Part shown: positions 100-54,026 of the stretch, piece after piece
Layout: each line of letters opens with the position of its first letter
How positions within the stretch are numbered: the stretch's first letter is position 1
Assembly (NCBI GenBank): GCA_011109175.1
Contig: RDEW01000012.1
Location: 1,215,220 to 1,279,219, forward strand
From: Dicyema japonicum
Lineage: Eukaryota > Animalia > Dicyemida
Direction of reading: 5' to 3'
DNA: 64,000 nucleotides
Position numbers and translations under genes: made by a program
The notes under the pieces: model-generated
Told to the model about the DNA's origin: nothing
The model's database searches: none
The model's input: the letters and a program-made list of their open reading frames with translations, nothing else

Positions 100-1900
100 T
101 GGTTGTGTTATATCAGCTGAAATGAAAAATTACACAGATCACGATAGCACCAAACTAACTACAGTCAGACCCCGAATTGGGGCAGACCCCAGGGGTGGGG
201 CACCCTCGGATTTTGGGCATTTTTTTATTGGCCAACATTTGGCAGAGTAAATGGAAAATCGATAAAAAATATGGAAATTTTGGGCACTATAAAATTGTGG
301 GGAATGAAATTATAAGTAAAAAATTATATTTTATTAATAAATATATAATTTTAATTTACACGTTCATTTACATTTCTGTTGTGAATGGTTATCAACTACG
401 AAACAAAATTAACGATTGCTAAATTGATATTGAAGAACAAATCATCTGAAAGACAGATAATTAAAAAATACAAAATTAGTAAAGGCATGATTTCGCGAAT
501 AAAAAAAAACAATTGTACCTTTTCTTGAACAAGTACTATAAACACGGATGAGGAAACTATGCTTATTGTGAGAAATCTAAATTCAATAATCAAGTTTTTG
601 AAATATTTCATAACTACGCGAAGATAAGGTTCCAATATCAGGTCCTTTCATAAAGAAAATTGCTTTATATACGGCTTCAAAAATTGGATTTGATACTTTC
701 AAAGCTTCAAACGGCTGGCTTGACAGATTTAAAATGCTGGATGACTGGAAATATTTTTATGAGCTGGTTGACTCGGATAAATGAAAGATTTTATACAATC
801 AACAGAAAAGTATTAATATTGCTTGATAATGCGAGATGTCATAAAACTATTGAATGCTCTATATTGAGTTTTTATTTTTGCCAAAAAATACAAAACGTAT
901 TTGCAACGATTGGATATGGGAATTATCAAGACTTTAAAGATTATTACTCAAATTATCTGATTCAGTATTTGTGTTTTGAGGAGGATGATGATGAATTCAA
1001 ACGGTTGATAAACAAAATAAACTTCGTCATGTAATGCTGCTAATTTCTAAAAGCTGGGAAAAACTTGATCCAAGTTTAATATTTAATTGTCGGAATCAAA
1101 TTGAAAAGATTTGTGATTCTCTAAAAATTGAAGATACCATTACAGAAGAAATGATCAACAATGCCGTAGACGAAACATTGAATGGGAAAGTGACGAATTC
1201 GTTGATAATATTTACAACGAAAGTTTAGAAAAATAACATGGAAACAATTCTAAGAGAAACGCAAGATTCTCTTGATCAGTTAGAGAAGAAAATTTTTTAC
1301 ATATCTCCTGAAATGCTCAAAGAATTTTTCGATTTTCGACTTAATTTTATAAAAAATGTAAGAAGTAAAAGGATAACTGGGGATAAATTAACTGATTATT
1401 TTTCTAAAATTGATTTTTGATGTTTAAAATCTCTGTTTTATTAAACCCCTGTTTTTGGGGCACTTGGTGCCCAATTCGGGGTCGGACTGTACTCACGTGA
1501 TCCCTGCACGCTCTAACAGAGACTTCAACTTAGCAACGATGTTCTTCCTCGAACTCACACAAGCATGTATCACTCATACAACCGGATGCTCGTAGTCATA
1601 CTGGCTCGTTTCATGAGGATTAGGAAAATCTACAGGAAATGGAGAGGGGACCTTTCCAGAAGTCCTTTTCAATTTATATCAGCAAGCTCTATCTTCCAGT
1701 TATGCACTGAAAATAGCATATGCTTTTTTTCTCTCTCTCTAGATTTGCACTTTCCTTTTAAGAGGATCGAGCGTATAAACTTTCTCAAACAGAAAACCAT
1801 CGTGTGTGATTGGCTTGAGTACGATTCTCACATTTCTACCTATAAATTGACCCGCAGCTGGTTGAAGGCCGTCGGTCTCATACTGCTAACGAGAGGAGGA
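100..1900 (-). mobile_element. 5'-truncated I/Jockey-group LINE 3' end, interrupted by the pogo element
   Basis: The minus strand ends LKSLLERAGIT*, matching the C-terminus of the LINE at 42190 (RILVERIGIT*). The 3' UTR motif is split by the TA-flanked pogo insertion. Confidence 0.6.
162..1489 (+). mobile_element. pogo/Tigger-like DNA transposon, degraded transposase (CENP-B HTH + DDE_1)
   Basis: TIRs CAGTCAGACCCCGAATTGGG (162) and reverse complement CAGTCCGACCCCGAATTGGG (ending 1489), both flanked by TA. Internal remnants include KKYKISKGMISRIKK, FKASNGWLDRFK and KVLILLDNARCHK, with stops and frameshifts. Confidence 0.85.
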
Positions 1901-3907: not shown

Positions 3908-6900
3908 ATGAGCGATGTGTTACTTTTAGCCATTTAAGAGCATTACTTCATTGGACGGTAACAAAGACTTTATTCGCAACTTCAAGCAAATCAAGGACGA
4001 CCGAAGATCCTCGGTTAGCATTTGGGTGACTTTAATAGATGGACGAGAGACACAAATACATGCTAAACCAAGTAACCACTAGTTTCTAACAAACAAGCTC
4101 GTATTATGCTCCGGACTCGACTATAATACAGTTGAAGATTGTTTAGTGGGAGATTCTGAATTTGAGATTTTTTCTGAATTCTTTTCCAAAGGGGGACCAC
4201 TTAAAATGACATTTATCCACAATGATACAGCCGAGAAGGGGAAACAAATAAGGATTTTCAGAGACGCCATTGACGTAGGGTCATAAAGCTATCTTAGACG
4301 ATCGAAGGCTTCTGCTACGTCTTTATAAAGGACAGGAAGGACATCACCAATTCTAACATTGCCCAGGAAGTGATGTTTACCATGTTTGAAAGCAGTCCCG
4401 AAGAGTTCCTCACTAGTGTAACCACCTTGCTTACTGAGCTTTACATTCCCGTAGTGAAATGCAACGAAGTAACCGTTTTCTATAATTTCAGGACTTGAAA
4501 AAAATAACCTCCTGTCCAGGGATTGCAGACGAGTTGGTAGAAAACCTCGAAGACTTTGTAAAGAACCTATCCTCTGTTGGGAGGCCATCGTCTAAGAAGG
4601 AAATTCTTAACATGGACAAAGTTAACGAAGCACTCGGGCAGTATACGACGCCTAAAACATATTCCAGTGCTGGTAGTGATTTAAAAATCATTATATAGCC
4701 GCAAAGAGTGACCTTGTTGAACTCGTAGAAAAAGAGGTCGGAATTTGGATGAAAAGGATCGAACAGACTTTGGCGGAGAACGAACAGATGAGACAAGAGA
4801 CTGACGACGTTGGGCCCACAGCTGAACTGAATTATTGGAAGGGAAGAATGACTATCTTTAGTGGGTTAACTTGGGGTTTCTATATTACTAGATTACTCGA
4901 ACAAATCACAACGTTTGAGTGTGTCAGAGCCTTGCTGGTTTTGAAGCTTGCAAAATCGAAATTTTTGCCAAAATGGCATAAACTGGTAGAAATATATTTG
5001 ACTTTACAGGAACTCAAAATAATCACGTCTTCCAACGAAGCGAAGAGCAACGTAAAGTTTCTTTATACTTTGGAAAAATACTTTGGTCCCCTTGGGAGAG
5101 CCAATCCAGTTTGATATTACTTACCCTATAAATAGGCAAAACTGGTGGAGATTATTCCCGGAGTGATAAATTCAGTCAAAATGATATACTCCGTTTCTCA
5201 ATATTACAACACGGCAGAACGGATTACATCGTTGTTTGTGAAGATTACGAATCAAATGATCGCTTGCTGTAAATGCTACCTCAGGGGAGATGATACTAAA
5301 ATATGGGATCAGCCAAAGTGGGGGAAAGATGTATAGCTTTAGGGATGAGCTGATCAAAAAAATTAACGAATGCATCCACCTGAAGGATTCCTATCATAAA
5401 TACTACCAAAGAACAAAGGAGGCTCTTAAGGCTGACGAAAGTGAGAAGCAGTTTGAGTTTAGGTAAAAATATTAAAAACTAAAAATAGTGAAAACTACAT
5501 TTTCGGAAAGATTGACGCCTTCTGTAAAAGACTGACGATGATTGTCGAGGTGATTGAAACAATCCATGCCTACTCGGGGATCAATTCTATAAAGGCTGAC
5601 GGATTCGATTCAATCGTCGTCAGATTTAAGGCAGTTACGGACATTATCTATAAAAAGTCCTATGACATTTTGGATCAGAGAAAAAATGAGGTAAAAAATA
5701 ATCGCCAACTTAGTTTAAAATTGACTTTGCAGAATTTCAGGCGAATATAAACCAGATAAAGCAAAATATCGAGAATTTCCTAAGTGGGTGGATATCTCGT
5801 CCTTTATCTGTGATAAATGTATTAATTTCCAAGGTCGACAAATCATTGGAATTGGTGGGTAAATTTGTTGGCTTGAAGGAGCTTGATCTTCACAGACTTT
5901 ATTCAGAGATATTCTCGAACTATGAGAGGGAGTTGGAGCAAACGAGAAGAATATATGAAAAGAATTGCCGAGATCCTCCACTTTTGCGATTCCACCCTCC
6001 GACCGTTAGTCGGATCCTTTGGGCGAGACAACTCTTCAGAAGAATAGAAGGGCCAATGAACGCATTTAAGGGAATTCCTAAATTTTTGGAAGTTTGATAA
6101 AAATACTATTTAGAACCCCGAATACCGTGAAAGTATTATTATGTACAACAAAATCGCTTCAGTTTTGATAGAATACGAGGTTTCCATTTCCAAAATATTC
6201 AAAGATTCAAAGCTTCAATAAATGGCACGAGAATGTGGCGAAACTGAAAGATACTCTTTATTCGAGTTTGTTGATGAAGACTGGCAAGACATATTCTGTG
6301 AACTTCAACTACCGGATTCTTGAGTTGCTTCACGAGGGAAGTTACATGGTGGACATTGGACTCGACATTCCGAAGGAAATCGAAACAATCTGTGCAAGAA
6401 AAATTCAAATAAAAAACACTCTGTCAAAGTTTACTCCACCAAATTATTTCAGGCTTCAGGATATGCTGACGTCCTATAAAAACGTAATAAATTCGGTACC
6501 CCGACTTTTGATGGAGCCAGTGAAGCCTTTTATCGAAAAAATTCGTGGACTGATGGATTTCGGGACCACGTCACTAAATTGGCAATCACTAAACGTCGAC
6601 TCTTGTAAATTTGAAATTTGAATATTTTTAGATAGAACCAAAGTTATGGATATGATATCGAACTTTCAACAGCTGATAAAGGAAGCCGACGACATTCTCA
6701 TCTACAGAATCGAAAAAGTATTCGAAGACATTGGGGGGACTAAATTATTCGAGACTAACCTATCCGAGCCAATCAACGTGGACAGCTTCCTAGAAAACAG
6801 TAGAACCAGTTGCAGCAAAATTTCCAAAGAACTTAAAAAGTCGACCCTTATGTCATGTTAGGAAAACTTTGATGGTCGAGGAAGCCGTGAAAGAGCTGGT

Positions 6901-9900
6901 CGCCTTGCTGATTGATAAAATGGATTTGAAAGATAAGGTCGACCTCTCTTCGGATGGAATATGTCAAAAATCTGACATGACCGAACACCTGAGTCGAGTT
7001 TACTACAATCTTTTGAATTACTTCGTCCAAAAAAATACAGACATGTTCATAAAATGTTCAATTTCCGTTATATTTATTCAGGCACAAAGTCATCATTAGA
7101 TTGCCTGCGGAAGAAGTTACAGACTACAAGCGGAAGCTATCATCGATCCGAGTGATAGTTCCCCCTTTTTCATCGCTGATATTGTCTTTGCCTTGCCTCA
7201 GATTGTTGTGAGTCCGACCGTCGAGGAAACCCAATCTCACATTCAAAAAATCGTCCAAAGTATATTTGACGGGATCAACTCCCTCCCAACGTGGAGTCAC
7301 TTTTATTTACAGCAAGAAATCCAAAGAAGAGTACTTCATATGGCTAATGAATAGGATCATGAATCTCAAATGAATGAAGAGACCGAAGAGCAGGTGATCT
7401 CTCAATACACCGGGAAAACAATCCACAAACAAATCATCGAAAATAAGGAAATTAGTAAAACAATCAATCTCCTAAACTCCACAATATCCCTATACAAGCC
7501 ATTTATTGAGGACACCTTAAGCAGTCTTGAAAAATACTCCCATCTCTGGAATCAGGTGTTGTCACATGGTAATCAAGTAGGAGATATCCACGGTGGTTGG
7601 TGAGTTCAGTGGTAGCAACAAATCAACATCAGACTTTGGATATCAAATATCGTACTATGAAGTAAATCAGTGGGTTATTGGTAGGCCTTGGAAAAAGAAA
7701 TCGAGGAGATGAAACCAACTATACACGTGGGACCTTTGATATTAAAGACTGAGAAACTGAAACAAGGCTTAATCAGTGAATGTTCGCGTTGGAAATTTGA
7801 ATATGCCAAAAGTTTGAATGATCGATGTGCAAAGAAAATGACCGAGCTGTTCGATTACTTCACAAATACGTCTAAGCATTTATCAAGACCCATTAAAGTT
7901 CAACTTTGTACGACTTTTACAGGATCTTGACGACATTCGAAGCCATATGGGGACTTTAATAGAACTCAGGGAATCTGAAATTGACATCGAGTTTAGCATG
8001 ACTCCAATCGAAGAGGCCTACGCCATCCTCCATAAACATCAAATCAGTTTCAACGATGGAAATGCCGAGAAAATAGATTCATTGAGCTACAACTGGAAGA
8101 AACTGATTTCCCAAGTAAAAATGGCTTGACCATGAATAGTCTAAAGAAGTGAATGAAACGCTGTTGGAACTGCAGCCAAAATTCAGGGAAGAGCTGATCA
8201 ATGGCTCTGAAATTTTTCGGAAGGACGAGTCCGAATATATTGATTTTTACGACAACAAGTTGATTTTAGGTAATTTGTGTTAGAGGACCAATGGAGAAAG
8301 GGATCACTCCGAGGGAAGCAAGTGACCGGCTTACAGTTTTCCAAGCACGTTTTGATGAACTCTGGAATAAATATATTACATATAATGGAGGAGAGGAGCT
8401 TTTTGGAATGGCAATAACTGAGTACCCTGAACTCCAAAGAGTCAAAAGGGAGTTGAATCTGCTGCAAAAGCTATACGGACTTTACAATTCTGTTCTCGAG
8501 ACTGTCAACGGCTATTATGACATAGCCTGGACTGATATTGACATTGAAAAAATCAACACTGAACTGATTGAGTTCCAAAACAAGTAATCTTTGATCAAGT
8601 GACCTCAGATGTCGCAAACTCCCAAGGGTTTGAAGGAATGGGAGGCGTACGAAGAACTTAGAAAAACGATCGACGATTTTAATGAGACATGTCCCCTGTT
8701 GGAAATGATGAGCAATAAAGCAATGGTTTCTCGGCATTGGGAGAGACTGGATAACCTTACAGGGCATAAATTTGACGTTGAAGGAGACAACTTCATGCTG
8801 CGTGATTTGATGAAGGCCCCACTATTAAAGTATAAAGAAGACATTGAAGTTTGAATTCTAGCTGACTTGTAGGATATATGCATTTCCGCAGTCAAAGAAA
8901 AAGAAATCGAAGCCAAGCTGAAACAGGTCATTAACGACTGGAGCGTTCAATCTTTTTCTTTTGGAACTTTCAAGTCACGTGGAGAACTACTTTTAAAGGG
9001 TTTGAGTGTCAGAATTAGTTTAGGTGATACAACAGGCGAGTCGATCTCTTTTATGGAGGACAGCCTTATGGTGTTGAGTTCTCTACTAGGAAACAGGTAA
9101 TGTCCCCGCTATATGGTAGATACAATGCGCCCTTTAAACCCAAGATCAGCGAATGGGTCCAAAAATTAACCTCCACCACAGAAATTATAGAGAATTGGTT
9201 GATCGTGCAAAACTTGTGGGTTTACTTGGAAGCAGTGTTTGTCGGTGGAGATATAGCAAAACAACTCCCGCAGGCATAATTTTTTTGTATTTACTAAAAT
9301 AGGAAGCAAAAATGTTTTCGAATATCGACAAATCATGGCAAAAAATCATGCAGAGAGCTCACGAGGAAAGTAACATTGTTCAATGCTGTGTTGGGGACGA
9401 CACAATGATGCAGCTCCTCCCCCATCTTCTTGAACAATTAGAGATGTGCCAAAAATCTCTGACCGGATATTTAGAGAAAAAGAGACTTATTTTTTCAAGA
9501 TTTTTTTTCGTCTCGGATCCAGCGCTTCTTGAAATTCTTGGACAGGCAAGTGACCCCCACACAATTCAAGTTAATTTAAGAGCCATATTTTAGAATCATC
9601 TACTGAGTGTCTTTGATAACACAAAGGCAGTGACATTCGACCATAAAGTGTATGAAAAAATCACCCAGCTGCAATCACAGGAAGGTGAGATCATTGACCT
9701 CGAAAAACCCGTTATGGCGCAAGTTTTCAACATTTTTCCATTTCTAAGGGAAATGTGGAGATTTGGCTCGGAGATTTATTACGCGCTACTCGGTTGACGA
9801 TTCACTCAATAATTCGAACGGCAAATATTTCGATCCAAGACTCAAACTTCAACTTAATAGAATTCGAAAATAACTTTCCCGCCCAAGTATTACAAAGGGT

Positions 9901-12900
9901 TAACCCAATAGACCGGATTATTGGGACTTCAACTGATATGGACTAAGGGATCGGAAGAAGCCATAACAAACTCCCGAAATGACAAGAAGACAATGTCACA
10001 AACCGCCCAGAGATGGAACGATGTGTTGAATCAACTAATCAAAATAACGACTACTGATCTGACCAAGTTTGAGAGGACTAAATTCGAAACCCTCATCACA
10101 ATACACGTCCACCAAAAAGACATCTTCGACATTCTTGTATAATCCCTTCTTTATCAGGTCAAAATGCACGTTCGCTCAATAAACGACTTTGAATGGCTCA
10201 AACAGTCCCGATTTTATTTCCACGAAGATGACGATAAATGCGTAATTTCCATTACTGATGTCGATTTCTCCTACCAAAACGAATATTTAGGATGCACTGA
10301 TAGACTTGTCATTACTCCGTTAACGGATAGGTTGGTCGGTGTCTATATTTAAAGATGCTACATAACATTGGCTCAGGCTTTGGGAATGTCTTTGGGGGGT
10401 GCTCCAGCTGGACCCGCTGGAACCGGAAAAACTGAAACTACTAAAGACATGGGGAGATGTCTTGGAAAATATGTCGTTGTCTTTAATTGCTCTGATCAAA
10501 TGGACTTCCGTGGACTTGGAAGGATATATAAAGGATTGGCACAGTCAGGATCCTGGGGATGTTTTGATGAGTTCAATCGAATCGAATTACCGGTTTTATC
10601 GGTCGCAGCTCAACAAATCGCGATTGTCTTATCGGCAAAAAAAGAGAGAAAACACCAATTCATCTTCACCGACGGAGATCTTGTTGACTTGGATCCCGAA
10701 TTCGGTCTCTTTTTAACGATGGTATTATTACACTTAATTTGAGAACCCCGGATACGCTGGACGACAGGAATTACCAGAAAATTTGAAAATAAACTTCAGA
10801 ACTGTCGCAATGATGGTCCCCGACAGAGGAATCATTATGCGAGTCAAACTAGCCAGTGCTGGATTTGTTCAGAATGTGGTCCTCTCTAAAAAATTCTTCA
10901 CATTATACAAGTTATGTGAGGAACAGTTGAGTAAACAGGTAATTTTGGTTTCGAAAAAATTAGGTTCACTACGATTTTGGATTGCGGAATATTCTGTCAG
11001 TTTTGAGAACTCTGGGGGCGTTCAAACGAGGAAATCCTCAAGATTCTGAGCCAACAATTGTTATGAGAGTTCTTAGAGATATGAATGTCTCCAAACTGGT
11101 GGACGAGGATGAACCTCTTTTCATGTCTCTTATTGACGACCTTTTCCCAGGAATGCAACTGGACAAGGCTGGGTACCCAGAGATAGAGAGTGCAATTGCA
11201 GATCAAGTACTCGCCCGATCAAATTTGTAGGTTGAAAAGGAAGGGCTCATAAATCATGCTCCGTGGACTCTTAAGCTGATTCAATTGTATGAGACACAAC
11301 GTGTTCGCCACGGAATGATGGCACTTGGTCCTTCTGGGGCGGGGAAGTCAAAATGCATAAAAATCCTAATGAAAGCGATGACTCAGTGTGGAGTTGTTCA
11401 TAAGGAAATGAGAATGAATCCAAAAGCGATTACAGCTCCACAAATGTTCGGGAGACTCGACGTGGCTACGAACGACTGGACTGACGGAATATTTAGCACA
11501 TTGTGGAGAAAGACGCTTAAAGCCAAAAAAGTTTATTTCACTGTAAGTGTGCAGGGAGATCACATTTGGCTTATTTTGGACGGACCCGTTGACGCAATTT
11601 GGATTGAAAATCTCAATTCTGTCCTCGATGACAACAAAACCTTGACTTTGGCTAATGGAGACAGAATAACAATGTCCCCCACCTGCAAGATAATATTCGA
11701 AGTGCACAATATCGACAATGCGTCCCCTGCCACTGTCTCAAGGAATGGAATGGTTTACATGAGCTCATCAATCATGGATTGGGAGCCAATTTTGAAAGGT
11801 AAATCCAAATTGTCATTCAAACAGCCTGGTTATTAACACGACCAGCAGCCCAATCAGAAATAATATTTCAGTCCTTGAAAAATGTTTGGTCGGAATGTCT
11901 CTGCTATGTAAAACAAAATTTAGTCTCAAAGATGGAGGTTGTCCACTTCACTAACCTAGATTTTGGATTGCAACTACATCAATCAGTTTATCAATATTCT
12001 TAACGGAATGCTGCCGACAAGCGAAGAAGCCAAATCTGTCACTCAAAAGCAAATTGAGTCATCTATCTTTTTCTCGATTATGTGGTCTTTGGGGTCACTT
12101 CTTGAAATCCCTGATCGTTATAAAGTTCATTGGAGTGCATATTTTTAGTTGGAAGAGTACATCAAAGAAAATCACACGTCACTGTCAATTCCCACGTGTG
12201 ATAAGGAATCTACAATTTTTGAGTATGTCCCCGACAACGAAGGGAATTGGATTCACTGGGAATCGAGAGTTCGTTCAATTTGGTAATATTAGGTAAATGC
12301 GTACAACTACCCCAAGGATTCAGTGCCTGAATACGTTTCGATTTTGATCCCCAACGTTGACAATACGCGGACTGATTTTTTGATAAATATAATTTCCAAA
12401 CAAGCAAAGTCCGTGCTTCTAATAGGAGAACAAGTAAATAGATAGGCTCATAATTAGGGGACTGCCAAGACAGTGATGGTGCAAGGATATTGCAACAAAT
12501 TTGATCCCGAACAGCACATGTTCAAGAGCATGAATTTTTCTAACGCTACAACCCCGCTAATGTTCCAGGTTTGAATGTGATCCTTATTATTCAGAGAAAC
12601 GTCGAAAGTTACGTTGAGAAAAGAATGGGAACCACGTATGGTCCCCCTGCTGGAAGAAAAATGACAGTTTTCATTGACGACATTAATATGCCAATAATTA
12701 ATGAGTGGGGAGATCAGGTTCACTTTTCTTGAGGATTTAAGATTACCAATGAAATAACGCGGCAAACTATGGAACAGAATGGGTTTTATAATCTCGAAAA
12801 GCCCGGGGAATTTACGACCATTTTGGACGTTCAGTTTATTGCTGCAATGATTCATCCCGGAGGAGGTCGAAATGACATTCCACAGCGATTAAAGAGACAA

Positions 12901-15900
12901 TTCAGTATCTTTAACTGCACTCTACCTTCCAATGCTTCAATCGACAAAATATTTAGGACCATTGGAGTGGGATATTTCGACAAGGTCATTTTTCTCGTTA
13001 AAATAGTGCCGTGATTTTACCGACGAAATCATTAATTTTGTTCCAAAGCTTATTCCGGCCACTAGAATTTTGTGGCAAAGAGTTAAGATCAAAATGTTAC
13101 CAACTCCCGCAAAGTTCCATTACGTCTTCAACCTTCGAGATCTTTCGAGAATTTGGCAGGTTGTACTTCACTTTATGTTTAGGGAATGCTAAACGTGCAA
13201 AGTGATGCTATAGCCAAAGAAAGCGATCTTCTGTCATTATGGAAGCACGAGTGCACACGTGTCATCGCGGATAGATTCATCGAATTTCAAGACTTGGAAT
13301 GGTTCAACAGAGCTCTTAAAAATGTGTTCTTTAATTTTATGCGAGATTTGTGACGAAGAATTCAGCGGTGAGCTCACGGAGCAAATTGACGAAGAACCAT
13401 ATTTCGTAGACTTCTTGCGAGATGCCCCGGAGATGACTGGTTGAATTAAATAATTTGAAAATTAGGAGAGGAAGAAGAGGCTGACGTTGAAGAACCAAAG
13501 ATTTACGAGGCAATTCCATCATACGACAAGCTACTCCAGCGTCTTTCCTATTATCAAAGTAACTATAACGAATCAGTTCGATCCGGGAAGATGGACTTGG
13601 TCTTTTTCAAAGTAAGTCTGCATTTCACAAAATAGGATGCAATGACTCACTTAGTCAAGGTTTCTCGCATCATCAGAACGATTAAAGGACATGCCCTACT
13701 TGTGGGTGTTGGAGGATCAGGAAAACAGAGTATCACTAAATTAGCGTCATACATCGCCGGATACGAAACTTTCCAAATCACACTTACAAGGTTGTGACCC
13801 TTAAACACTGAAGGGCTTACAACGTGTCAAATCTGATGGATGATCTGAAATATTTATTCAAAACAGCTGGACACAGGGGAAAGGGAATCACGTTTATTTT
13901 CACCGATAATGAAATAAAAGACGAGGCTTTCCTGGAATATATCAACAACATGTTATCTTCGGGGGAGGTAATGCACTGGTTATGACTCGAGATTGCTAAT
14001 TTGTTCCCCAGAGATGAGATGGACGAGATCCACCAAGAACTGATTCCCATAATGAAACGTGAATTTCCCAGAGTTCCCCCAACTTCCGAAAATTTGCACA
14101 ATTTTTACATGACACGAGTGCGGAAGAACTTGCACGTTGTTCTTTGCTTTTCTCCCGTTTTCTAAATAATTTAACTTTAGGTTGGGGAAAAGTTCCAAAA
14201 CCGAAGCCTTAAATTTCCAAGTCTGATTACAGGGACTACAATGGATTGGTACCAGCGTTGGCCAAAGGAAGCGTTGATCGCGGTCTCAGAATATTACCTT
14301 GAGTCATTCTACATTGAATGCACAGAACAAGTAAAGAAGAGTGTCGTCAAAGTAATGGGGGAATTTCAAGTAATTTACTGAGGTTACTTTAGGATTTTGT
14401 CGCTGTTTCATGCAGTGATTACTTCCAAAGATTCCGGAGACAAACTCATGTTACTCCAAAGTCATATCTGTCGTTCATTAACGGATACAAAATTATTTAC
14501 GCGGAAAAAAAAGAGAAAATAGATGAATTGGCAAGGAGAATGAATACTGGTATGATTACTTGCTTAGGTGTAGGCCTTGACAAGTTGCTGGAGGCGACGG
14601 AATCTGTGAATATCTTATCCGTCGAATTGGTAGACAAAGAGAAGGAACTAGAAGTTGCCAATAGGGAGGCAGATGAAGTCCTGAAAGAAGTCACGATTAT
14701 GGCCACTGCTGCCGAAAAGGTCAAGGCACAAGTTGCTGTTGTCAAAGATAAGGCCCAAGCCATTGTCGACGCAATCTCTGTATACTTTTAAAGTCATCAT
14801 TAGGTTGACAAAGCCGTAGCTATAGAAAAACTAAAAGAAGCTGAACCGGCACTTTTAAAGGCAGAACAGGCCTTGCAGACTATAAAACCATCTCACATTG
14901 CGACAGGTTTACACATTTTTGCTTAAAAAACAGTAAGAAAACTAGGGAAGCCACCTCATTTGATAATGAGAATCATGGATGCTGTCCTGATATTATTCCA
15001 GCGTAGACTAGACCCGGTTCAACAGGACCCTGAAAAGCCAACAGTGAAACCGTCATGGTCAGAGGCACTCAAATTAATGTCAAGTGGAAACTTTTTGCAG
15101 AATCTTCTGAACTTTCCGAAGGTTTATATCAAAATGAACAAATAGGACAACATCAACGCTGAAATGGTTGAGTTGATGGAGCCAACGCTAAACCAAGAGG
15201 ACTACACTCTGGAAAATGCAAAGAAAGTCTCAGGCGACGTGGCTGGTCTCCTATCCTGGACTGAAGCCATGAGTTTATTCTACTTGATCAACAGAGAAGT
15301 ACTGCCTTTAAAAGTTTTGACTTGCAAACAAATTTAAAGGCCAATCTAAAAATACAAGAGGCAAAGTTAGCCGTTGCTATGGGAGATCTGAAGGTCGCAC
15401 AGGATCAGTTGGATGAGAAACAGAGGGAACTGGACAAAGCCCAGGCGATATATGACAATGCAATGGCAAAGAAACAGGCATAACTCGTTGTGGTTATTTA
15501 GGCGCTGCTTGATGATGCCGAAGCCTGTCGTAAAAAAATGAGCAATGCGAAACAGCTCATCGATGGACTATCCGGTGAGAAGATCCGTTGGACTGCAGCT
15601 AGCAAACAATTTTCTTTACAGATCTACAAACTTGTGGGGGACATATTGCTTTGTACTGGATTTCTGTCCTACGGAGGGCCGTTCAACCAACAATTCCGAA
15701 ACATTCTGATACAAAATTGGAAGAAAATGATGGTCAAGCATGGAATCCCATTCGATGATGTTAGAGTTAGGAGATATCCCTAGGAATTGAACATAATAAA
15801 TATGCTCGTTGATAATACCACCATAAGTGAGTGGAATTTGCAAGGATTGCCGAATGATGAACTATCCACCCAGAATGGTCTCATTGCTACAAAGGCTGCT

Positions 15901-18900
15901 CGATATCCCCTTTTGATTGATCCACAAATGCAGGGGAAGACTTGGATCAAAAATAGGGAGGTTCAAGGATTGATTGTATTCTAAATGATCACATTTAGGT
16001 GACCAAACTAAGTCATAAATATTTCAGGACTCATCTGGAGACGCCCTTTCACAAGGACGACCTCTTTTGATTGAGGATATTGACGAAGAGTTAGACCCCG
16101 CTTTGGATAATATTTTGGAGAAGAATTTCATTAAAACTGGCTCAACCTATAAGGTATCCCCCAATCAAGTATTTAAAGGTCATTGTCGGGGATAAGGAGG
16201 TTGATGTGATGAATGGATTTATGCTATATATTACCACAAAATTGTCAAATCCTGCCTTTACTCCAGAAGTGAGCGCCCGAACCTCCATTAATTGATTTCA
16301 CTGTAACAATGAAGGGACTCGAAGACCAGCTACTCGGGATCACAATCCTGAAAGAGAAAAATGTCTGCCATTTTGTTATTGAAAGGAATTGGAAGCGGAA
16401 AGAACTAAATTATTCGAAGAAGTTACCGCAAACAAACGTCGAATGAAAGAATTGGAAGATAACTTGCTTTACAGGCTAACCACAACTGAGGGATCTTTGG
16501 TCGAGGACGACTCCCTCATTGAAGTCCTTCAGGTAACTAAAGCGACCGCCCACGAAGTTAGTGAAAAATTGCAAATTGCCGCTGACACTGAAATCAAGAT
16601 TAATACAGCTCGAGAAGAATTCCGTCCAGGTAGACGAAATCAAACAAACTTTAGTGGCTTCAAGGGGGAGTATTATGTACTTTCTGATCGTGGAAATGAG
16701 CATGGTGAACGTTATGTACCAAACGTCCTTGAAACAATTCCTCCAACTTTTCGACAAATCAATGAATGACTCCCCAAAGTCACCCATTACGCAAAAACGG
16801 ATTGCTAATATCATCGACTACTTAACTTATCAAGTATTCTGCTACACCCAACGGGGGTTCTACGAAGTCGACAAATTTTTATTTACAATTCTCATGACTT
16901 TGAAGATACAACTGAGTTTCGGAAATTTGAGACACGAGGAATTCCAAATTTTCATCAAAGGTTTGAATTTCAAGTTAGACAAGGTGGTGCTGCTTTGGAT
17001 TTAAATGCCGTCGAGCCGAAACCTAAAAAGTGGATACAAGATATCACGTGGCTTAATCTCGTTGAATTGAGTCGACTAAGCCAATTTTCACAGATTTTAA
17101 GTCAAGTAGCTCGTAATGACAAAGTTGACTGATATTTAATCTGCAGGTATGGAAAGAGTGGTTCGACAAGGACAGTCCTGAAGATAGTATTTTGCCGGAC
17201 GGGTATGACACGACTCTAGACATATTTAAAAAACTTCTTTTGGTGAGATGTTGGTGTCCTGACCGGTGTATTCCAATGGCCAAAAGATACGTTTCTGAAA
17301 TAATGGGACGTGAGGTAGAATTCGACGTTACTGTAGTACGCGGAAGGAGCTGTCCTTAATTTGGAAAGTATTTCGTCTGAGGGGGACGAAAGGACGCCTA
17401 TTATTTGTTTCCTTTCCATGGGATCAGACCCGACAGACAACATTGAAAAATATGCCAAAAAGATTGGTCTCCGTATACTTTGGTGAGAATGCTTTAGAGT
17501 GCAATGCGATATCAATGGGACAAGGTCAGGAGATTCACGCTCGGAAACTCCTTCAAATGGCAATGCAGGAAGGAAATTGGGTTATACTCCAAAACTGTCA
17601 TTTGGGGTTGAATTTTATGGACGAGCTACTTGAGATGGTTTTGCAAAAATTAAGCATTATTAGCTTCAAAATACAGAAAACATTGATTCTAAATTCCGGG
17701 GGTGGATTACTACAGAAGTACACCCGAAATTCTCCATCAACTTACTCCAGTCGTCGATAAAATTCACATTCGAACCCCCACAGGGCATCAAAGCTGGCAT
17801 AAAGCGAACATATGCCGGGGTTACTCAAGTAGACTTTTTTTTTACGAATCAGGAACAACTGGACTATACAAACATCCCTTGGTGGAGACCACTTCTCTAC
17901 GCTGTGGCCTTCCTCCATACAACTGTTCAGGAAAGAAGAAAATTTGGTCCAATCGGGTGGAATATTCCGTATGAGTTTAACCAATCAGACTTCAACGCCA
18001 CAGTTCAGTTTATAAGCAATTACCTGGATGAAGTTGACGTCAAAAAAGTTCGCAATCGAGATATTTCAGGGAATATCGTGGGTTACTATCCGCTATATGA
18101 TCAGTGAAGTACAGTATGGGGGAAGAGTCACTGATGACTTTGATAAAATTCTGCTGAATACTTATGCAAGGGTCTGGTTCAGTGACCAAATCTTTACCCC
18201 CTCATTTCAGTTTTATACCAGTAAATTCGGCCATTTTGACATTTAGACTATGTGATTCCAAACCATAAGAATATTGAGGACTATAGAACATATATTGAGT
18301 CTCTCCCACTCGTGGACACTCCGGAATGTTTTGGTCTCCACCCCAATGCAGACATCACGTAATATTATAAGCTATTTAGATACTCCACAACGATGGGTAA
18401 CCAAATGCTGAGCACAATCGTGAGCATTCAACCCAAAGACGCCAGTGGAACTGGTGGAGAAACCCGAGAGAGTGCTGTTTATAGGATAGCCGAGGATATG
18501 CTTAGTAAACTCCCACAAAACTACGTCGACTTTGAAGTATGCATGAATGCTTATTCCACAGGTCAAAAATGCCTTGAAAAAGATGGGTCACTTGCAGCCA
18601 CTGAACATATTCCTACGTCAAGAAATCGACAGGATTAAACGTGTGATAGGACTCGTGTATGCCACACTAAACGATTTGAAACTGGCCATCGACGGGACTA
18701 TAATCATGAGCGAGAACCTCAGAGATGCGCTTGATAGTTTATATGATGCTAGAATCCCAAGCACGTGGGCAAAGGTGAAATACGATCTTTCATTTAAAGA
18801 TCTCATGGGAATCGGCAACCATTGGATTTTGGTTTACCAATCTATTAGAACGAATGTGCAGTTGAACACGTGGCTCTTTGGAGGAAGACCAAAATCCTTT

Positions 18901-19361
18901 TGGATGACTGGATTCTTCAATCCACAGGTAAAATCTAAATTCAGAAAATAAGGGATTTTTGACCGCAATGAGGCAGGAAATTACACGTGCCCATAAAGGG
19001 TGGGCCTTGGATTGTGTTTCACTGTCCAACGAAGTCCTAAACAATCGAAGGAGGAGATCACTAAATCCCCCGAAGAAGGAGTATACGTTTACGGACTTTA
19101 TTTGGACGGAGCTGACTGGGATAAGAAAAATGGGAGATTAGTTGAGCCTCAGCCAAAAGTTTTGAACACAATTCTGCCGGTTGTGCATATTTTTGCCACA
19201 AACTCTGAACGTCCATCTGGCAAAACCTTATACGAATGTCCCGTGTATAAAAAACCACGGAGAACTGATTTAAATTACATATTTAACCTCCTACTTAAAA
19301 CACGAAAGAACCCGAACATTGGACTCTTAGAGGAGTGGCCGTCCTTTGTGACACCAAGTAG
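3908..19361 (+). CDS. DNAH5: Axonemal outer-arm dynein heavy chain (gamma/DNAH5-DNAH8 type), about 78 micro-introns
   Basis: Spliced translation gives AAA1 [35 protein letters not shown]2 [44 protein letters not shown]3 GEQ|GTAKT, AAA4 GVGGSGKQS, the stalk, and a C-terminus (HW)[12 protein letters not shown] ending at TAG 19359-19361. The start MSD|SITSLDG at 3908 is inferred. About 7 small indels break the frame. DNAH5 versus DNAH8 cannot be separated by eye. Confidence 0.95.
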
Positions 19362-19539
19362 ACCTAACTGATTAATCAAACTAATTAACAATTATTAACT
19401 TAAATAATAAATTTTAACAAAAAATTTAAATAATTATTAATATCCCATTTACTATATTGGGTCAAAAAATTCTTATTTATTTACCCCCGGATCCTTCAAG
19501 TGAAAGAAACCATTTGCTGACAAAAACGTCACAGCCAAG

Positions 19540-52770: not shown

Positions 52771-54026
52771 ATGATAGGGATTCGACAAATAAGGTTAACT
52801 TTTTACATCTGTTTGGTTAATAATAAAAGGTATAAGATATATTAGTAACTATCATTTTGATATTTTTGATTCACAAACTGACTAAGACGAATGTGTCTTT
52901 TAATATCAATTATACGACTTGTCAATTACTATTGAAAGGAAATCATGAAGTGATTTCAAAGTTGAAGGATGAATAGACAAACACGTTCGAGTATTATTCG
53001 AATCAGAAACTGTAAAAAACACGCAAAATCAAGTGGATATTTTTCATATCCGATATCTCAAGAGGAGCAAGCTAATCCACTAGCCTACTTGTTGATTGTT
53101 TACAGAAACTCTAAACAAGTTGAACAACTGCTCAGAACAATTTATAGAACAAATAACCATTATTGTATCCACGTGGACAGAAAATCCGATTCAGAATTTC
53201 TACAGAGTATTAAAAATTTCACAAGCTGTCTCCCAAATGTGATTGTAAGTAATACATATGGCGTCAAATGGGGGACAATCACTACATTGCTCGCAGAAAT
53301 AAAATGCATGGAATTACTATACAAAAGTTTGACTGATTGGAAATACATAATAAATTTAACAGGAGAAGAATTCCCATTGAAATCAAATAAGGAAATTGTA
53401 AGAATAACGAAAGCTCTCAACGGGTCTAATTGGATGGAGATTCCTATAATATTACCGTATATTTTGCTTTGGGATTATTTTAGAAAATACAGATATGAAA
53501 AAAAGGCCGATAATTTTAGAAATGGAATTAAACTATACAAGGCAGGTTTACACGGTGTTTTCTGTCGGGGATTTGTCGACTTTATATTGAAAAATGAAAC
53601 TTCCTCTGAATTACTTAAATGGTTGGAAGACACACATTGTCCTGATGAAACATTTTATCCAACATTAAACTATAATTCCAAAATTTTGAAAGTTCCAGGA
53701 TCATTGTCAGGTATATATATTATTATTTGAGCCAACATCGATCCTTAAAGCTTGAACCACAAATAAGAAATCGCTACAAACAATGGTTTACAGGGTGCTA
53801 TGGCTTCTTTGCTCGTGGTGTATGTATTTTGGGAGCACAGGATTTACAATATGCTGTTAATAGTAAAGCTATTATCGCCAACAAATTTCATGCAGATTAT
53901 AATCCGTCTACTCTAGATTGTTTAGAAAATTGGATTCGAATGAAGTCAATGAATCTTAATGATGAGTTTGACAACGACTACTTGGACATTTATAGAAAAC
54001 AGATTTTTGTTAAGAATCATGTATGA
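52771..54026 (+). CDS. Core-2/I-branching beta-1,6-N-acetylglucosaminyltransferase (GT14/GCNT family)
   Basis: Inferred type II TM segment (FYICLVTIILIFLIH). Motifs LAYLLIVY, IYRTNNHYCIHVDRKS, WKYIINLTGEEFPLKSNKEIV, CPDETFYPTLNY, GVCILG and IANKFH. Introns near 52816 and 53706-53731. Indels near 52816 and 52970-52985. Confidence 0.88.

What the first reader, a model, noticed from the sequence alone, without database searches (positions are those of the whole stretch)
3908..19361. Animal-type gene with about 78 introns, almost all 21-30 nt: a length-constrained micro-splicing system
Seen: the frame is restored only by removing tiny GT/GC..AG segments, e.g. 10137-10157 and 18359-18379 (21 nt), 3917-3938 and 10722-10743 (22 nt), 9274-9302 (29 nt). 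The same size class occurs in the four other host genes. The introns have no polypyrimidine tract, no visible branch-point consensus and no U1 complement beyond GT. Established: typical animal introns are much longer, and introns this short are known from dicyemids, some ciliates, nucleomorphs and microsporidia. Inference: splice-site choice here is set mainly by a length ruler, implying a remodelled spliceosome.
Basis: partly seen in the sequence, partly recalled or inferred. Interest (0 to 1): 0.85.

Follow-up and report, generated by a model that had tools for sequence, protein, structure and literature searches.

The report
Dynein gene with 77 micro-introns
A 15-kb gene for a ciliary motor protein (DNAH5-type dynein heavy chain) is interrupted by about 77 real introns of only 21-29 bases; this is true and striking, but it is the already published hallmark of dicyemid parasite genomes, not a new kind of splicing.

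Summary
Observation confirmed. My own protein-to-genome alignment priced every GT/GC..AG segment of 10-600 nt equally. Run against five dynein heavy chains, it placed 74-79 introns in 3908-19361. Sixty were identical for at least 4 of 5 references. The curated model has 77 introns: mean 24.2 nt, SD 1.5, range 21-29, 75 GT-AG and 2 GC-AG. It gives a 4,530-aa DNAH5-type protein, 50.7% identical to P0003. Decoy dinucleotides scored 600-1,000 units lower and needed 6-17 frameshifts.

Two of four intron positions tested coincide exactly with 901-nt and 5,117-nt introns of a bird orthologue, so at least these introns shrank in place.

- A length window leaves a footprint. Rival GT or AG sites that would give 21-30 nt are about 10-fold depleted around real introns.
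- Length alone is insufficient. The exons hold about 300 unused GT..AG pairs at that spacing.
- Exon -2 A, +3 A/T, -3 T and a U-rich, G-poor interior separate real introns from decoys (AUC 0.96).
- A remodelled spliceosome could not be tested.

Micro-introns of this size are published for dicyemids (2007, 2010, 2019, 2026). The organism is inferred, not proven. The scan's first-stage readers also noted the class on other pieces of this genome.

No RNA evidence was obtainable. Six single-base frameshifts look like assembly errors.

The parts
3908..19361 (+). DNAH5-type outer-arm axonemal dynein heavy chain gene; 78 exons, 77 introns; 4,530-aa product after six single-base patches
   Evidence: Pfam DHC_N1, AAA_6, AAA_5, AAA_8, Dynein_heavy, Dynein_C on exon pieces; best solved relative is human DNAH5, 8j07; model 50.7% identical to P0003 over 4,426 columns
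   Evidence: frame logic only; 3 of 5 references in the length-restricted run; N-terminus not conserved; alternative start ATG at 4039
4014..4038 (+). intron 25 nt
   Evidence: manual: joins the frame to MDERHKYML..., which matches the N-termini of P0018 and P0022
4072..4097 (+). intron 26 nt
   Evidence: 3 of 5 references, restricted run; manual check
4275..4297 (+). intron 23 nt
   Evidence: 3 of 5, restricted run
4469..4491 (+). intron 23 nt
   Evidence: 5 of 5 restricted; 2 of 5 unrestricted
4676..4698 (+). intron 23 nt (alternative donor at 4673)
   Evidence: 2 of 5; 4673-4698 also 2 of 5 in the restricted run (1 of 5 unrestricted)
4865..4891 (+). intron 27 nt, 3n, no in-frame stop
   Evidence: 4 of 5
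4986..5009 (+). intron 24 nt, 3n, no in-frame stop
   Evidence: 4 of 5
5109..5135 (+). intron 27 nt
   Evidence: 5 of 5
5318..5342 (+). intron 25 nt
   Evidence: 3 of 5
5463..5488 (+). intron 26 nt
   Evidence: 5 of 5
5691..5713 (+). intron 23 nt
   Evidence: 5 of 5
6092..6113 (+). intron 22 nt
   Evidence: 5 of 5
6180..6204 (+). intron 25 nt
   Evidence: 5 of 5
6605..6631 (+). intron 27 nt
   Evidence: 3 of 5 unrestricted, 5 of 5 restricted
6840..6861 (+). intron 22 nt
   Evidence: 5 of 5
7056..7081 (+). intron 26 nt
   Evidence: 5 of 5 restricted
7089..7113 (+). uncertain intron 25 nt; would leave a 7-nt micro-exon at 7082-7088
   Evidence: 1 of 5; alternatives are one intron of 69-78 nt or a frameshift at 7153
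7331..7354 (+). intron 24 nt
   Evidence: 5 of 5 restricted
7556..7580 (+). intron 25 nt
   Evidence: 4 of 5
7662..7684 (+). intron 23 nt
   Evidence: 4 of 5
7898..7922 (+). intron 25 nt
   Evidence: 5 of 5
8115..8139 (+). intron 25 nt
   Evidence: 5 of 5
8259..8283 (+). intron 25 nt
   Evidence: 4 of 5
8584..8608 (+). intron 25 nt; one base appears to be missing at its 5' edge (AAG|GT read as AAGT)
   Evidence: 4 of 5; frame analysis
8849..8872 (+). intron 24 nt
   Evidence: 5 of 5
9000..9023 (+). intron 24 nt, 3n, no in-frame stop
   Evidence: 3 of 5
9097..9119 (+). intron 23 nt
   Evidence: 5 of 5
   Evidence: 5 of 5
9570..9593 (+). intron 24 nt
   Evidence: 5 of 5
9723..9748 (+). intron 26 nt
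   Evidence: 5 of 5
9887..9911 (+). intron 25 nt
   Evidence: 5 of 5
   Evidence: 5 of 5
10331..10354 (+). intron 24 nt
   Evidence: 5 of 5
   Evidence: 5 of 5
10939..10963 (+). intron 25 nt; same residue and phase as a 5,117-nt intron of a bird DNAH5-like gene
   Evidence: 5 of 5; L002 comparison
11207..11230 (+). intron 24 nt
   Evidence: 5 of 5
11531..11554 (+). hidden intron 24 nt, no in-frame stop, inside a 201-codon open frame; same residue and phase as a 901-nt bird intron
   Evidence: its 8 codons are exactly absent from P0152 at 83% identity; 3 of 5
11799..11824 (+). intron 26 nt
   Evidence: 4 of 5
11938..11959 (+). intron 22 nt (alternative donor at 11941)
   Evidence: 2 of 5; 11941-11959 also 2 of 5
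12125..12148 (+). intron 24 nt
   Evidence: 5 of 5
12269..12292 (+). intron 24 nt
   Evidence: 5 of 5
12434..12457 (+). intron 24 nt
   Evidence: 5 of 5
12569..12594 (+). intron 26 nt
   Evidence: 5 of 5
12718..12741 (+). intron 24 nt
   Evidence: 5 of 5
12985..13006 (+). intron 22 nt
   Evidence: 5 of 5
13160..13182 (+). intron 23 nt
   Evidence: 5 of 5
13324..13345 (+). intron 22 nt, GAG acceptor
   Evidence: 4 of 5
13440..13465 (+). intron 26 nt (acceptor ambiguous: 13465, 13468 or 13474)
   Evidence: 2 + 2 + 1 of 5
13612..13635 (+). intron 24 nt
   Evidence: 5 of 5
13791..13813 (+). intron 23 nt
   Evidence: 5 of 5
13968..13991 (+). intron 24 nt, GAG acceptor
   Evidence: 5 of 5
14157..14180 (+). 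intron 24 nt
   Evidence: 5 of 5
14370..14392 (+). intron 23 nt
   Evidence: 5 of 5
14550..14573 (+). intron 24 nt, 3n, no in-frame stop
   Evidence: 5 of 5
14780..14803 (+). intron 24 nt
   Evidence: 5 of 5
14907..14933 (+). intron 27 nt
   Evidence: 5 of 5
15122..15145 (+). intron 24 nt
   Evidence: 5 of 5
15314..15339 (+). intron 26 nt
   Evidence: 5 of 5
15478..15501 (+). intron 24 nt, GC-AG
   Evidence: 5 of 5
15760..15783 (+). intron 24 nt
   Evidence: 5 of 5
   Evidence: 4 of 5 with frameshift option; frame analysis
16154..16178 (+). intron 25 nt
   Evidence: 4 of 5
16363..16385 (+). intron 23 nt
   Evidence: 5 of 5
16630..16654 (+). intron 25 nt
   Evidence: 5 of 5
16961..16983 (+). 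intron 23 nt
   Evidence: 4 of 5
17124..17146 (+). intron 23 nt
   Evidence: 5 of 5
17315..17336 (+). intron 22 nt
   Evidence: 5 of 5
17473..17497 (+). intron 25 nt
   Evidence: 5 of 5
17638..17663 (+). intron 26 nt
   Evidence: 4 of 5
17829..17852 (+). intron 24 nt, 3n, no in-frame stop
   Evidence: 3 of 5
18048..18069 (+). intron 22 nt
   Evidence: 4 of 5
18221..18246 (+). intron 26 nt
   Evidence: 5 of 5
   Evidence: 5 of 5
18537..18561 (+). intron 25 nt
   Evidence: 3 of 5
18775..18799 (+). intron 25 nt
   Evidence: 4 of 5
18928..18952 (+). intron 25 nt
   Evidence: 5 of 5
16038..16042 (+). apparent 1-nt deletion in an exon (GAG GAC read as GAGAC)
   Evidence: homology continues in the next frame with no gap
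16281..16294 (+). apparent 1-nt insertion in an exon (modelled as the extra A at 16287)
18848..18861 (+). apparent 1-nt deletion in an exon (CGAAATG read as CGAATG)
19037..19051 (+). apparent 1-nt deletion in an exon (A-rich run)
   Evidence: otherwise bridged by false 11-, 17- or 23-nt introns
19300..19314 (+). apparent 1-nt deletion in an exon (CGAAAGAA)
19359..19361 (+). stop codon TAG after ...[14 protein letters not shown], the conserved dynein C-terminus
19406..19411 (+). AATAAA, a likely polyadenylation signal 45 nt after the stop
   Evidence: read from the sequence printed
53706..53731 (+). 26-nt intron (GAG acceptor) in a second host gene, a GCNT-like glycosyltransferase at 52966-54026
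   Evidence: 4 of 4 references; Pfam Branch

Best explanation
This is an orthologue of the outer-arm axonemal dynein heavy chain DNAH5, in a genome whose ordinary (U2-type, GT/GC-AG) spliceosomal introns have shrunk to about the smallest size its spliceosome can still remove.

At least part of the ancestral intron set was kept. The count is 77 here against 78 in human DNAH5, and some positions are identical. Each intron is reduced to 21-29 nt.

Recognition is by intron definition across a very short distance, and uses several weak cues together:
- a donor in the context A(A/G)|GT(A/T);
- a U-rich, G-poor interior;
- an A about 16-17 nt from the 5' end, which is 7-8 nt before the 3' end and the likely branch point;
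- the first AG that lies at least 21 nt from the donor, preferably TAG followed by G.

Pairs closer than 21 nt are invisible to the machinery. Pairs 21-30 nt apart are competent, so selection has removed rival GT and AG sites from that window around every real intron.

Introns whose length is a multiple of three tend to carry an in-frame stop, so that retention is caught by mRNA surveillance.

Shown here: the intron coordinates, sizes, boundaries and signals; the exclusion zone; the shared positions.
Inferred: removal at the RNA level, the branch point, the role of surveillance, and the organism (a dicyemid, most likely Dicyema japonicum).
For: - Homology-guided alignment with a flat price for 10-600 nt finds 74-79 introns, nearly all 21-29 nt. 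Sixty are identical for at least 4 of 5 references.
- GT/GC..AG is specific: score 5793 and no frameshift, against 4795-5184 and 6-17 frameshifts for seven decoy pairs.
- The model gives one open frame of 4,530 aa, 50.7% identical to P0003, ending at the conserved C-terminus.
- Signals and sizes.
- First-AG rule: 44 internal AG ending at positions 4-19, only one from position 20 on.
- Exclusion zone at 21-30 nt: AG 9 against 30.9 expected, GT 3 against 22.5. It holds when sites within 3-4 nt are left out. It is absent around 286 exonic decoy pairs, where the zone/control ratios are 0.82 and 1.03, against 0.06 and 0.09 for real introns.
- Context plus composition separate real introns from decoys, AUC 0.96.
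- In-frame stops occur in 21/27 introns of 3n length against 23/50 of the others (Fisher p = 0.0085).
- Two of four bird DNAH5-like intron positions match exactly in residue and phase: 901 nt against 24 nt, and 5,117 nt against 25 nt. Human DNAH5 has 79 exons.
- A second gene has a 26-nt intron, and its best relatives are molluscs and a brachiopod.
- Literature: dicyemid introns measure 26.2 +/- 1.9 nt (PMC2222250) or a median of 27 bp (PMC6543705). D. japonicum is the only non-myxozoan animal with introns under 30 bp; its splice signals are reduced to GTa and AG, with a weak A run (PMC13644364).
- GC content, exon size and the dates of the sequencing runs fit D. japonicum (PMC6736024).
Against: - Removal therefore rests on homology and on published cDNA work in dicyemids.
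- The organism's name is hidden and is only inferred.
- Seventeen of the 77 introns, mostly in the poorly conserved N-terminal third, have fewer than 4 of 5 references. One spot (7082-7113) is unresolved.
- Six single-base frameshifts mean either assembly errors or a damaged copy.
- The branch-point A is a weak signal (36/77 and 31/77 against a 31% background). Anchoring to the 5' end and to the 3' end cannot be told apart with 77 introns.
- The excess of stops in 3n introns is partly open to ascertainment bias. Two stop-free 3n candidates were left out. Against shuffled interiors P is only 0.05.
Confidence: 0.8

Rival explanations
1. A true two-sided molecular ruler. The spliceosome of this animal pairs a donor with an AG only if the two are 21-30 nt apart. 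A fixed-span bridge between the 5' splice site and the 3' end replaces recognition of the branch point and pyrimidine tract, as in U2AF-independent splicing. The machinery is therefore remodelled.
For: - Sharp floor: 8 internal GT at a would-be length of 20, none at 21-22.
- The exclusion zone ends at about 30 nt for both GT and AG.
- No pyrimidine tract and no branch consensus.
- Unchecked first-stage notes report divergent, shortened U1 snRNA genes elsewhere in this genome.
Against: - 313 exonic GT..AG pairs at the same spacing are not used and are not depleted, so distance is not the main discriminator.
- The ceiling can equally come from ordinary first-AG scanning, plus the weakness of distant cryptic donors.
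- Myxozoans and Stentor, whose introns are as short or shorter, keep a conserved U2 and U2AF and most of the spliceosome (PMC13644364, PMC9505925).
- Annotated dicyemid genomes report a minority of longer introns: mean 38 bp, and about one third over 30 bp (PMC6736024, PMC6543705).
Confidence: 0.15
2. The locus is a decaying pseudogene or a mis-assembled stretch. On this view the frame breaks are random lesions, not introns.
For: Six single-base frameshifts in coding exons.
Against: - The 77 interruptions all carry GT/GC..AG, and all are 21-29 nt.
- Decoy boundaries fail.
- No exon has an in-frame stop in 4,530 codons.
- Identity to orthologues reaches 83% in the motor domain.
- The frameshifts are single bases, four of the six in or next to short runs of one base (GG, AA, AAA). 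Five are deletions and one is an insertion, which suggests consensus errors.
- The D. japonicum assembly merged a PacBio RS II/Falcon assembly with an Illumina one, and the passages I read describe no polishing step (PMC6736024).
Confidence: 0.04
3. The short segments are removed from DNA, not from RNA. This would be programmed elimination of short internal sequences, as in ciliates.
For: Sizes resemble the shortest Paramecium eliminated sequences (my own knowledge). DNA elimination has been described in dicyemids (my own recollection, not checked here).
Against: - Boundaries are GT..AG, not TA..TA.
- Positions coincide with spliceosomal introns of a bird orthologue.
- Runs that appear to be DNA hold 91-93% of the words of the unspliced sequence.
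- Published cDNA-versus-genome comparisons in Dicyema treat these segments as spliceosomal introns (PMC2222250).
Confidence: 0.01

Closest known systems
Dicyemid micro-introns (Aruga et al. 2007, PMC2222250; Ogino et al. 2010, Gene 449:70; Zverkov et al. 2019, PMC6543705; Lu et al. 2019, PMC6736024; Hadjez et al. 2026, PMC13644364)
   Same: - An animal genome with a narrow intron size class. Published values are 26.2 +/- 1.9 nt and a median of 27 bp; here 24.2 +/- 1.5 nt.
- Intron positions conserved with other animals.
- 5' signal reduced to GTa, 3' signal reduced to AG, and a weak A run before the AG.
- GC of about 36%, exons of about 170-200 nt, and a ciliated organism.
   Different: Nothing essential. 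This gene's introns are about 2 nt shorter than the published means and none exceeds 29 nt.

Not found in the papers I read: the exclusion zone for rival sites, the first-AG rule, the stop bias of 3n introns, and the exon -2 A signal. I did not have access to Ogino 2010 or to the supplements of the 2026 paper.
Myxobolid myxozoan ultra-short introns (Hadjez et al. 2026, PMC13644364)
   Same: Median 22-27 bp, reduced splice signals, parasitic animals.
   Different: These are cnidarians with lower GC (29% in Henneguya). To my knowledge they have no cilia, so an intact axonemal dynein would be unexpected. The second gene in this window has mollusc and brachiopod best relatives.
Ciliate tiny introns: Paramecium (20-35 nt, mean about 25) and Stentor (15-16 nt; PMC9505925)
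   Same: - The size class.
- AT-rich introns with weak signals.
- In Paramecium, introns of 3n length tend to carry stops so that retention is caught by surveillance (Jaillon et al. 2008, my own knowledge). The same tendency is seen here: 21/27 against 23/50.
   Different: Introns of 3n length are not depleted here (27/77 = 35%). The organism is an animal and the introns sit at animal-conserved positions.
Bigelowiella natans nucleomorph introns (18-21 nt; cited in PMC2222250)
   Same: Extreme, uniform shortening with retained intron density.
   Different: Those are shorter still and lie in a relict nucleus of an alga.
Human ultra-short introns spliced without U2AF (SPF45/RBM17-dependent; Fukumura et al. 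2021; my own knowledge, not checked here)
   Same: Short introns with a truncated pyrimidine tract that need an alternative 3' splice-site factor. This is a possible model for how tract-less micro-introns are recognised.
   Different: The human cases are 40-60 nt and a small minority of introns. No factor was examined here.

Membership tests
U2-type (major) GT-AG spliceosomal introns | GT (rarely GC) at the 5' end and AG at the 3' end | tested here: met
   75 GT-AG and 2 GC-AG of 77. Seven decoy dinucleotide pairs fail.
U2-type (major) GT-AG spliceosomal introns | Removal restores one open frame collinear with orthologues | tested here: met
   4,530-aa product, 50.7% identical to P0003 over 4,426 columns, after six single-base patches. 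The junction at 11531-11554 matches a homologue exactly.
U2-type (major) GT-AG spliceosomal introns | Positions homologous to introns of orthologous genes in other species | tested here: met
   2 of 4 bird DNAH5-like introns are at the identical residue and phase. Only a 350-aa span was tested.
U2-type (major) GT-AG spliceosomal introns | Absent from mature mRNA | not testable with these tools
No transcript-derived protein of the same organism was found.
U2-type (major) GT-AG spliceosomal introns | Branch-point adenosine and lariat formation | tested here: inconclusive
   Only a weak A peak at -8/-7 (36/77 and 31/77). No CTRAY enrichment: 5 against 5.8 expected. Lariats are not testable here.
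Dicyemid micro-intron class | Narrow length distribution centred below 30 nt | tested here: met
   Mean 24.2, SD 1.5, range 21-29, n = 77. A second gene has a 26-nt intron.
Dicyemid micro-intron class | Splice signals reduced to GTa and AG | tested here: met
   +3 is A or T in 67/77. Positions +4 to +6 carry 0.25 bit or less. Position -3 is T in 46/77, and 14 AAG and 3 GAG acceptors occur.
Dicyemid micro-intron class | The organism is a dicyemid | tested here: inconclusive
   Organism names are coded. Indirect support:
- an animal DNAH5 orthologue, implying cilia;
- mollusc and brachiopod best relatives for the second gene;
- GC and exon size as published for D. japonicum (PMC6736024);
- runs dated 2017 and 2019.
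Paramecium-type surveillance-constrained tiny introns | Introns of 3n length are under-represented | tested here: not met
   27 of 77 are 3n (35%).
Paramecium-type surveillance-constrained tiny introns | Introns of 3n length carry in-frame stops more often than expected | tested here: met
   21/27 against 23/50 for the others (p = 0.0085). Against shuffled interiors, 16.5 expected, P = 0.05. Six exceptions, and some ascertainment bias.
U12-type (minor) introns | AT-AC or GT-AG ends with a /RTATCCTT donor and a TCCTTAAC branch site | tested here: not met
   No AT-AC intron was needed. Only 16154-16178 starts with GTATCC, and it has no TCCTTAAC. No minor snRNA is in the window.

The most novel reading that the evidence does not exclude
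The exclusion-zone footprint may reflect a real two-sided distance gate. In this animal any competent GT would be paired with the first AG 21-30 nt downstream and with nothing nearer or farther. A fixed-span cross-intron bridge would then replace pyrimidine-tract and branch-site recognition. Together with the unchecked notes of divergent U1 snRNAs in this genome, that would be a mechanistically altered spliceosome, which has not been demonstrated in any animal.
Probability: 0.15. Interest if true: 0.7.

Novelty: already known. Interest (0 to 1): 0.3.

Why it matters
The phenomenon itself is published: animal introns under 30 nt, kept at ancestral positions, with almost no splice consensus. It remains mechanistically unexplained. 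The 2026 paper ends by saying that how these introns are recognised is unknown.

This window supplies a large, homology-anchored test set from a single gene: 60 introns placed independently of any length assumption. From it come three quantitative constraints that any mechanism must satisfy:
- a hard floor at 21 nt;
- the first AG at least 21 nt from the donor is the one used;
- rival sites are purged from the 21-30-nt window.

It also shows that length alone cannot define these introns.

Practical consequences for annotation:
- Stop-free 24-nt introns hide inside open reading frames (11531-11554).
- Single-base assembly errors are easily mistaken for odd introns of 11, 17, 40 or 52 nt.
- Spliced aligners with a minimum intron length above 20 nt will miss the whole class.

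Tried and rejected
1. Shortest-path models that minimise the number of introns or the number of bases removed. They pick 240-300-nt or 7-12-nt false introns. Frame restoration alone is not evidence.

2. A window-wide count of frame-rescuing GT..AG segments by length. There was no peak, and control dinucleotides behaved alike. The statistic is too permissive.

3. An ab initio Viterbi pass with codon usage, splice-site weights and composition under a flat length prior. It over-predicts, at 149 introns. The sequence signals are too weak without homology.

4. Read mapping.

5. Sequencing-run search for RNA. It returned only the same four runs of unknown kind, with 0.91-0.93 of the words, which probably means DNA.

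6. Looking for transcript-derived proteins of the same organism. None was above 83% identity.

7. Intron-position comparison with P0003 (gene range 478 kb, no DNA returned), P0018 (an intron-less transcript contig) and an Echinostoma fragment (my aligner failed on that locus).

8. Pfam on 30 long open frames gave only transposon relics and one glycosyltransferase. A codon-score-plus-classifier scan recovered only 22 of the 77 known introns and nothing credible elsewhere.

9. Rfam scan of the window for snRNAs: nothing.

10. Anchoring the A peak to the 5' or the 3' end: undecidable with 77 introns.

Full report
**What is there.** Open-frame pieces between 3908 and 19361 on the + strand carry, in order, the Pfam domains of a dynein heavy chain: DHC_N1, AAA_6, AAA_5, AAA_8, Dynein_heavy and Dynein_C. 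The best solved relative of a 201-residue exon piece is human DNAH5 (8j07, E = 1e-102), ahead of other outer-arm heavy chains. The gene is therefore a DNAH5-type outer-arm axonemal dynein, which implies a ciliated organism.

**Checking the introns without assuming their size.** Frame restoration alone proved worthless as evidence. Models that minimise the number of introns choose 240-300-nt segments. Models that minimise removed bases choose 7-12-nt segments. A window-wide count of frame-rescuing GT..AG segments shows no length peak.

I therefore fetched full-length dynein heavy chains and wrote a protein-to-genome aligner. In it, any GT/GC..AG segment of 10-600 nt costs the same. Results:
- With five references of 40-51% identity it places 74-79 introns.
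- Apart from a few artefacts in unconserved or frameshifted places, they are 21-29 nt long.
- Sixty are identical for at least four of the five references.
- In the well-conserved stretch 9303-15975 the real dinucleotides give 32 introns, all 21-27 nt, no frameshift, and a score of 5793.
- Seven decoy dinucleotide pairs give 4795-5184, need 6-17 frameshifts, and produce scattered lengths.

**Curated model.**
- 77 introns. Mean length 24.2 nt, SD 1.5, range 21-29, mode 24.
- 75 are GT-AG and 2 are GC-AG (9274-9302 and 15478-15501).
- Phases 0/1/2 number 55/12/10.
- 78 exons with a mean of 174 nt.
- The product is 4,530 aa, 50.7% identical to P0003 over 4,426 columns. It ends in the conserved ...[14 protein letters not shown] before TAG at 19359-19361.
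- AATAAA follows at 19406-19411 (read).

Six places cannot be bridged by introns, because the homology runs on without a gap in another frame. They behave as five single-base deletions (at 8584, 16040, about 18854, about 19046, about 19307) and one single-base insertion (about 16287). Four of the six lie in or next to short runs of one base.

No exon has an in-frame stop in 4,530 codons. The published D. japonicum assembly merged a PacBio RS II/Falcon assembly with an Illumina one. I therefore rate these six sites as assembly errors (about 75%) rather than a damaged gene.

Uncertain spots:
- 7082-7113: a 7-nt micro-exon between two introns, one longer intron, or a seventh frameshift.
- The first two exons: an alternative start is the ATG at 4039, directly before the conserved MDERHKYML.
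- Two stop-free 24-nt candidates, 5810-5833 and 6429-6452.

**Signals.**
- The exon side of the donor carries the strongest signal beyond GT: A at -2 in 58/77, and A or G at -1 in 64/77.
- Position +3 is A or T in 67/77. Positions +4 to +6 are nearly uninformative.
- At the acceptor, -3 is T in 46, A in 14, C in 14 and G in 3 of the 77. The next exon starts with G in 41/77.
- Interiors are 40% T and 13% G, against 25% and 23% in exonic decoys.
- There is no pyrimidine tract in the usual sense: C is 12.5% of intron bases.
- There is no enrichment of branch-site motifs: CTRAY is in 5 introns against 5.8 expected.
- A frequency peaks weakly at positions +16/+17, which equal -8/-7 (35, 34 and 36, 31 of 77). 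With 77 introns the two anchorings cannot be separated.

These figures match the reduced GTa and AG logos and the weak A run reported for D. japonicum in 2026 (PMC13644364).

**Does length choose the sites?** There are two results, pulling in opposite directions.

First, around real introns there is a sharp exclusion zone.
- With the true donor fixed, AG dinucleotides that would give 21-30 nt number 9 against 30.9 expected.
- With the true acceptor fixed, rival GT number 3 against 22.5 expected.
- Leaving out sites within 3 nt of the true one gives 1 against 16.5, and 1 against 10.7.
- Sites giving 20 nt or less are common: 44 internal AG ending at positions 4-19, and 8 internal GT at exactly 20 nt.
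- Sites giving 31 nt or more are at normal frequency.
- The same measurement around 286 exonic decoy pairs shows no dip. Zone/control ratios are 0.82 and 1.03, against 0.06 and 0.09 for real introns.

So the acceptor is essentially the first AG at least 21 nt from the donor. Each intron is also the innermost competent GT-AG pair.

Second, the spliced exons of this one gene hold 313 GT..AG pairs at 21-30-nt spacing, no fewer than at other spacings. By homology these are not removed. Length is therefore necessary but not sufficient. A logistic model on donor context, acceptor context and interior composition separates real introns from exonic decoys with a cross-validated AUC of 0.96 (donor context alone 0.91, composition alone 0.87). 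An ab initio pass with these signals and a flat length prior still over-predicts two-fold. So either some information is still missing, or mis-splicing is tolerated and cleaned up afterwards.

**Surveillance signature.** Introns whose length is a multiple of three are not rare (27/77). They do carry an in-frame stop more often than the others: 21/27 against 23/50 (p = 0.0085). Against shuffled interiors the expectation is 16.5 and P = 0.05. The clearest exception is 11531-11554, which sits inside a 201-codon open frame. Its eight codons are exactly missing from a bird DNAH5-like protein that is 83% identical, with perfect flanks.

**Origin of the introns.** I aligned that bird protein to its own genomic locus (L002). 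It has four introns in the 350-residue span.
- Two fall at the identical residue and phase as introns here: 5,117 nt against 25 nt at 10939-10963, and 901 nt against 24 nt at 11531-11554.
- Two bird introns have no partner here, and two of the four here in that span have none in the bird.
- The chance of two exact matches is about 1e-4 (my estimate).

Human DNAH5 has 79 exons, against 78 here. At least part of the intron set is therefore ancestral and has shrunk in place, as Ogino et al. (2010) concluded for 40 D. japonicum genes (cited in PMC6543705).

**Rest of the window.** Most long open frames are transposon relics: DDE_1 at 654-1031, and RVT_1 at 24080-24379 and 41353-42033. One further host gene was identified, a core-2/I-branching glycosyltransferase (Pfam Branch) at 52966-54026. 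Its best relatives are from molluscs and a brachiopod. All four references place one 26-nt intron in it, at 53706-53731, with a GAG acceptor. No Rfam family reaches threshold in the window.

**Which organism.** Names are coded. The combination points to a dicyemid, most likely D. japonicum:
- animal-type DNAH5;
- spiralian-like best relatives for the second gene;
- GC of about 36%;
- exons of about 174 nt;
- introns of about 24-26 nt;
- runs dated 2017 and 2019 (PMC6736024, PMC6543705).

The only other animals known to have such introns, myxobolid myxozoans, have lower GC (PMC13644364) and, to my knowledge, lack cilia. I put the dicyemid reading at about 90%.

**Verdict.** The phenomenon is already known: 2007 (26.2 +/- 1.9 nt, n = 16, PMC2222250), 2010, 2019 and 2026. 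The first-stage readers of this scan also noted the micro-intron class on other pieces of the same genome.

The 'length ruler' idea is partly supported by the exclusion zone and the first-AG rule, but length is not the main discriminator. The 'remodelled spliceosome' remains untested and is not required, to judge from myxozoans and Stentor (PMC13644364, PMC9505925).

- a homology-anchored set of 60-77 introns;
- the 21-nt floor and the 21-30-nt exclusion zone;
- the exon -2 A signal;
- the stop bias of 3n introns, with clear exceptions;
- two exactly conserved intron positions;
- six probable assembly indels.

Noticed in passing
window 8584, 16040, 16287, 18854, 19046, 19307: Six single-base frameshifts in otherwise intact dynein exons: five apparent deletions and one insertion, four of them in or next to short runs of one base. 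They are probably assembly consensus errors.
   Followed up: partly
window 11531-11554: A 24-nt intron without an in-frame stop, hidden inside a 201-codon open reading frame. It is invisible to any ORF-based reading. It shows only as an exact 8-residue gap against orthologues, and as a 901-nt intron at the same site in a bird.
   Followed up: yes
window 7082-7088: A possible 7-nt micro-exon between introns 7056-7081 and 7089-7113. Alternatives are one intron of 69-78 nt or another frameshift at 7153.
   Followed up: partly
window 5810-5833 and 6429-6452: Two intron-like 24-nt GT..AG segments without in-frame stops, in the weakly conserved tail. Two of five references prefer to remove each. They may be optional or retained introns.
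   Followed up: partly
window 52966-54026 (+): A second host gene: a GCNT-like core-2/I-branching glycosyltransferase. It has one 26-nt intron (53706-53731, GAG acceptor). Its best relatives are from molluscs and a brachiopod.
   Followed up: yes
window 654-1031, 24080-24379, 41353-42033: Transposon relics: a DDE_1 transposase piece and two reverse-transcriptase pieces. Much of the window outside the dynein gene looks repeat-derived, in line with the roughly 49% repeats published for D. japonicum.
   Followed up: no
window 3908-4038: The first two exons (MSD / SITSL...RRSS) have no homology. The conserved N-terminus starts at the ATG at 4039 (MDERHKYML...), so the true start codon may be 4039, and 3908-4038 may be 5' UTR with two introns.
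   Followed up: partly
window 3908-19361: Phase 0 holds 55 of the 77 introns (71%). The last two exon bases are A(A/G) in most cases. That is a stronger phase bias than I would expect for an animal gene.
   Followed up: no
window 16154-16178: This 25-nt intron starts with GTATCC, the first six bases of the minor-spliceosome donor consensus. It has no matching branch-site motif, so this is probably coincidence.
   Followed up: no
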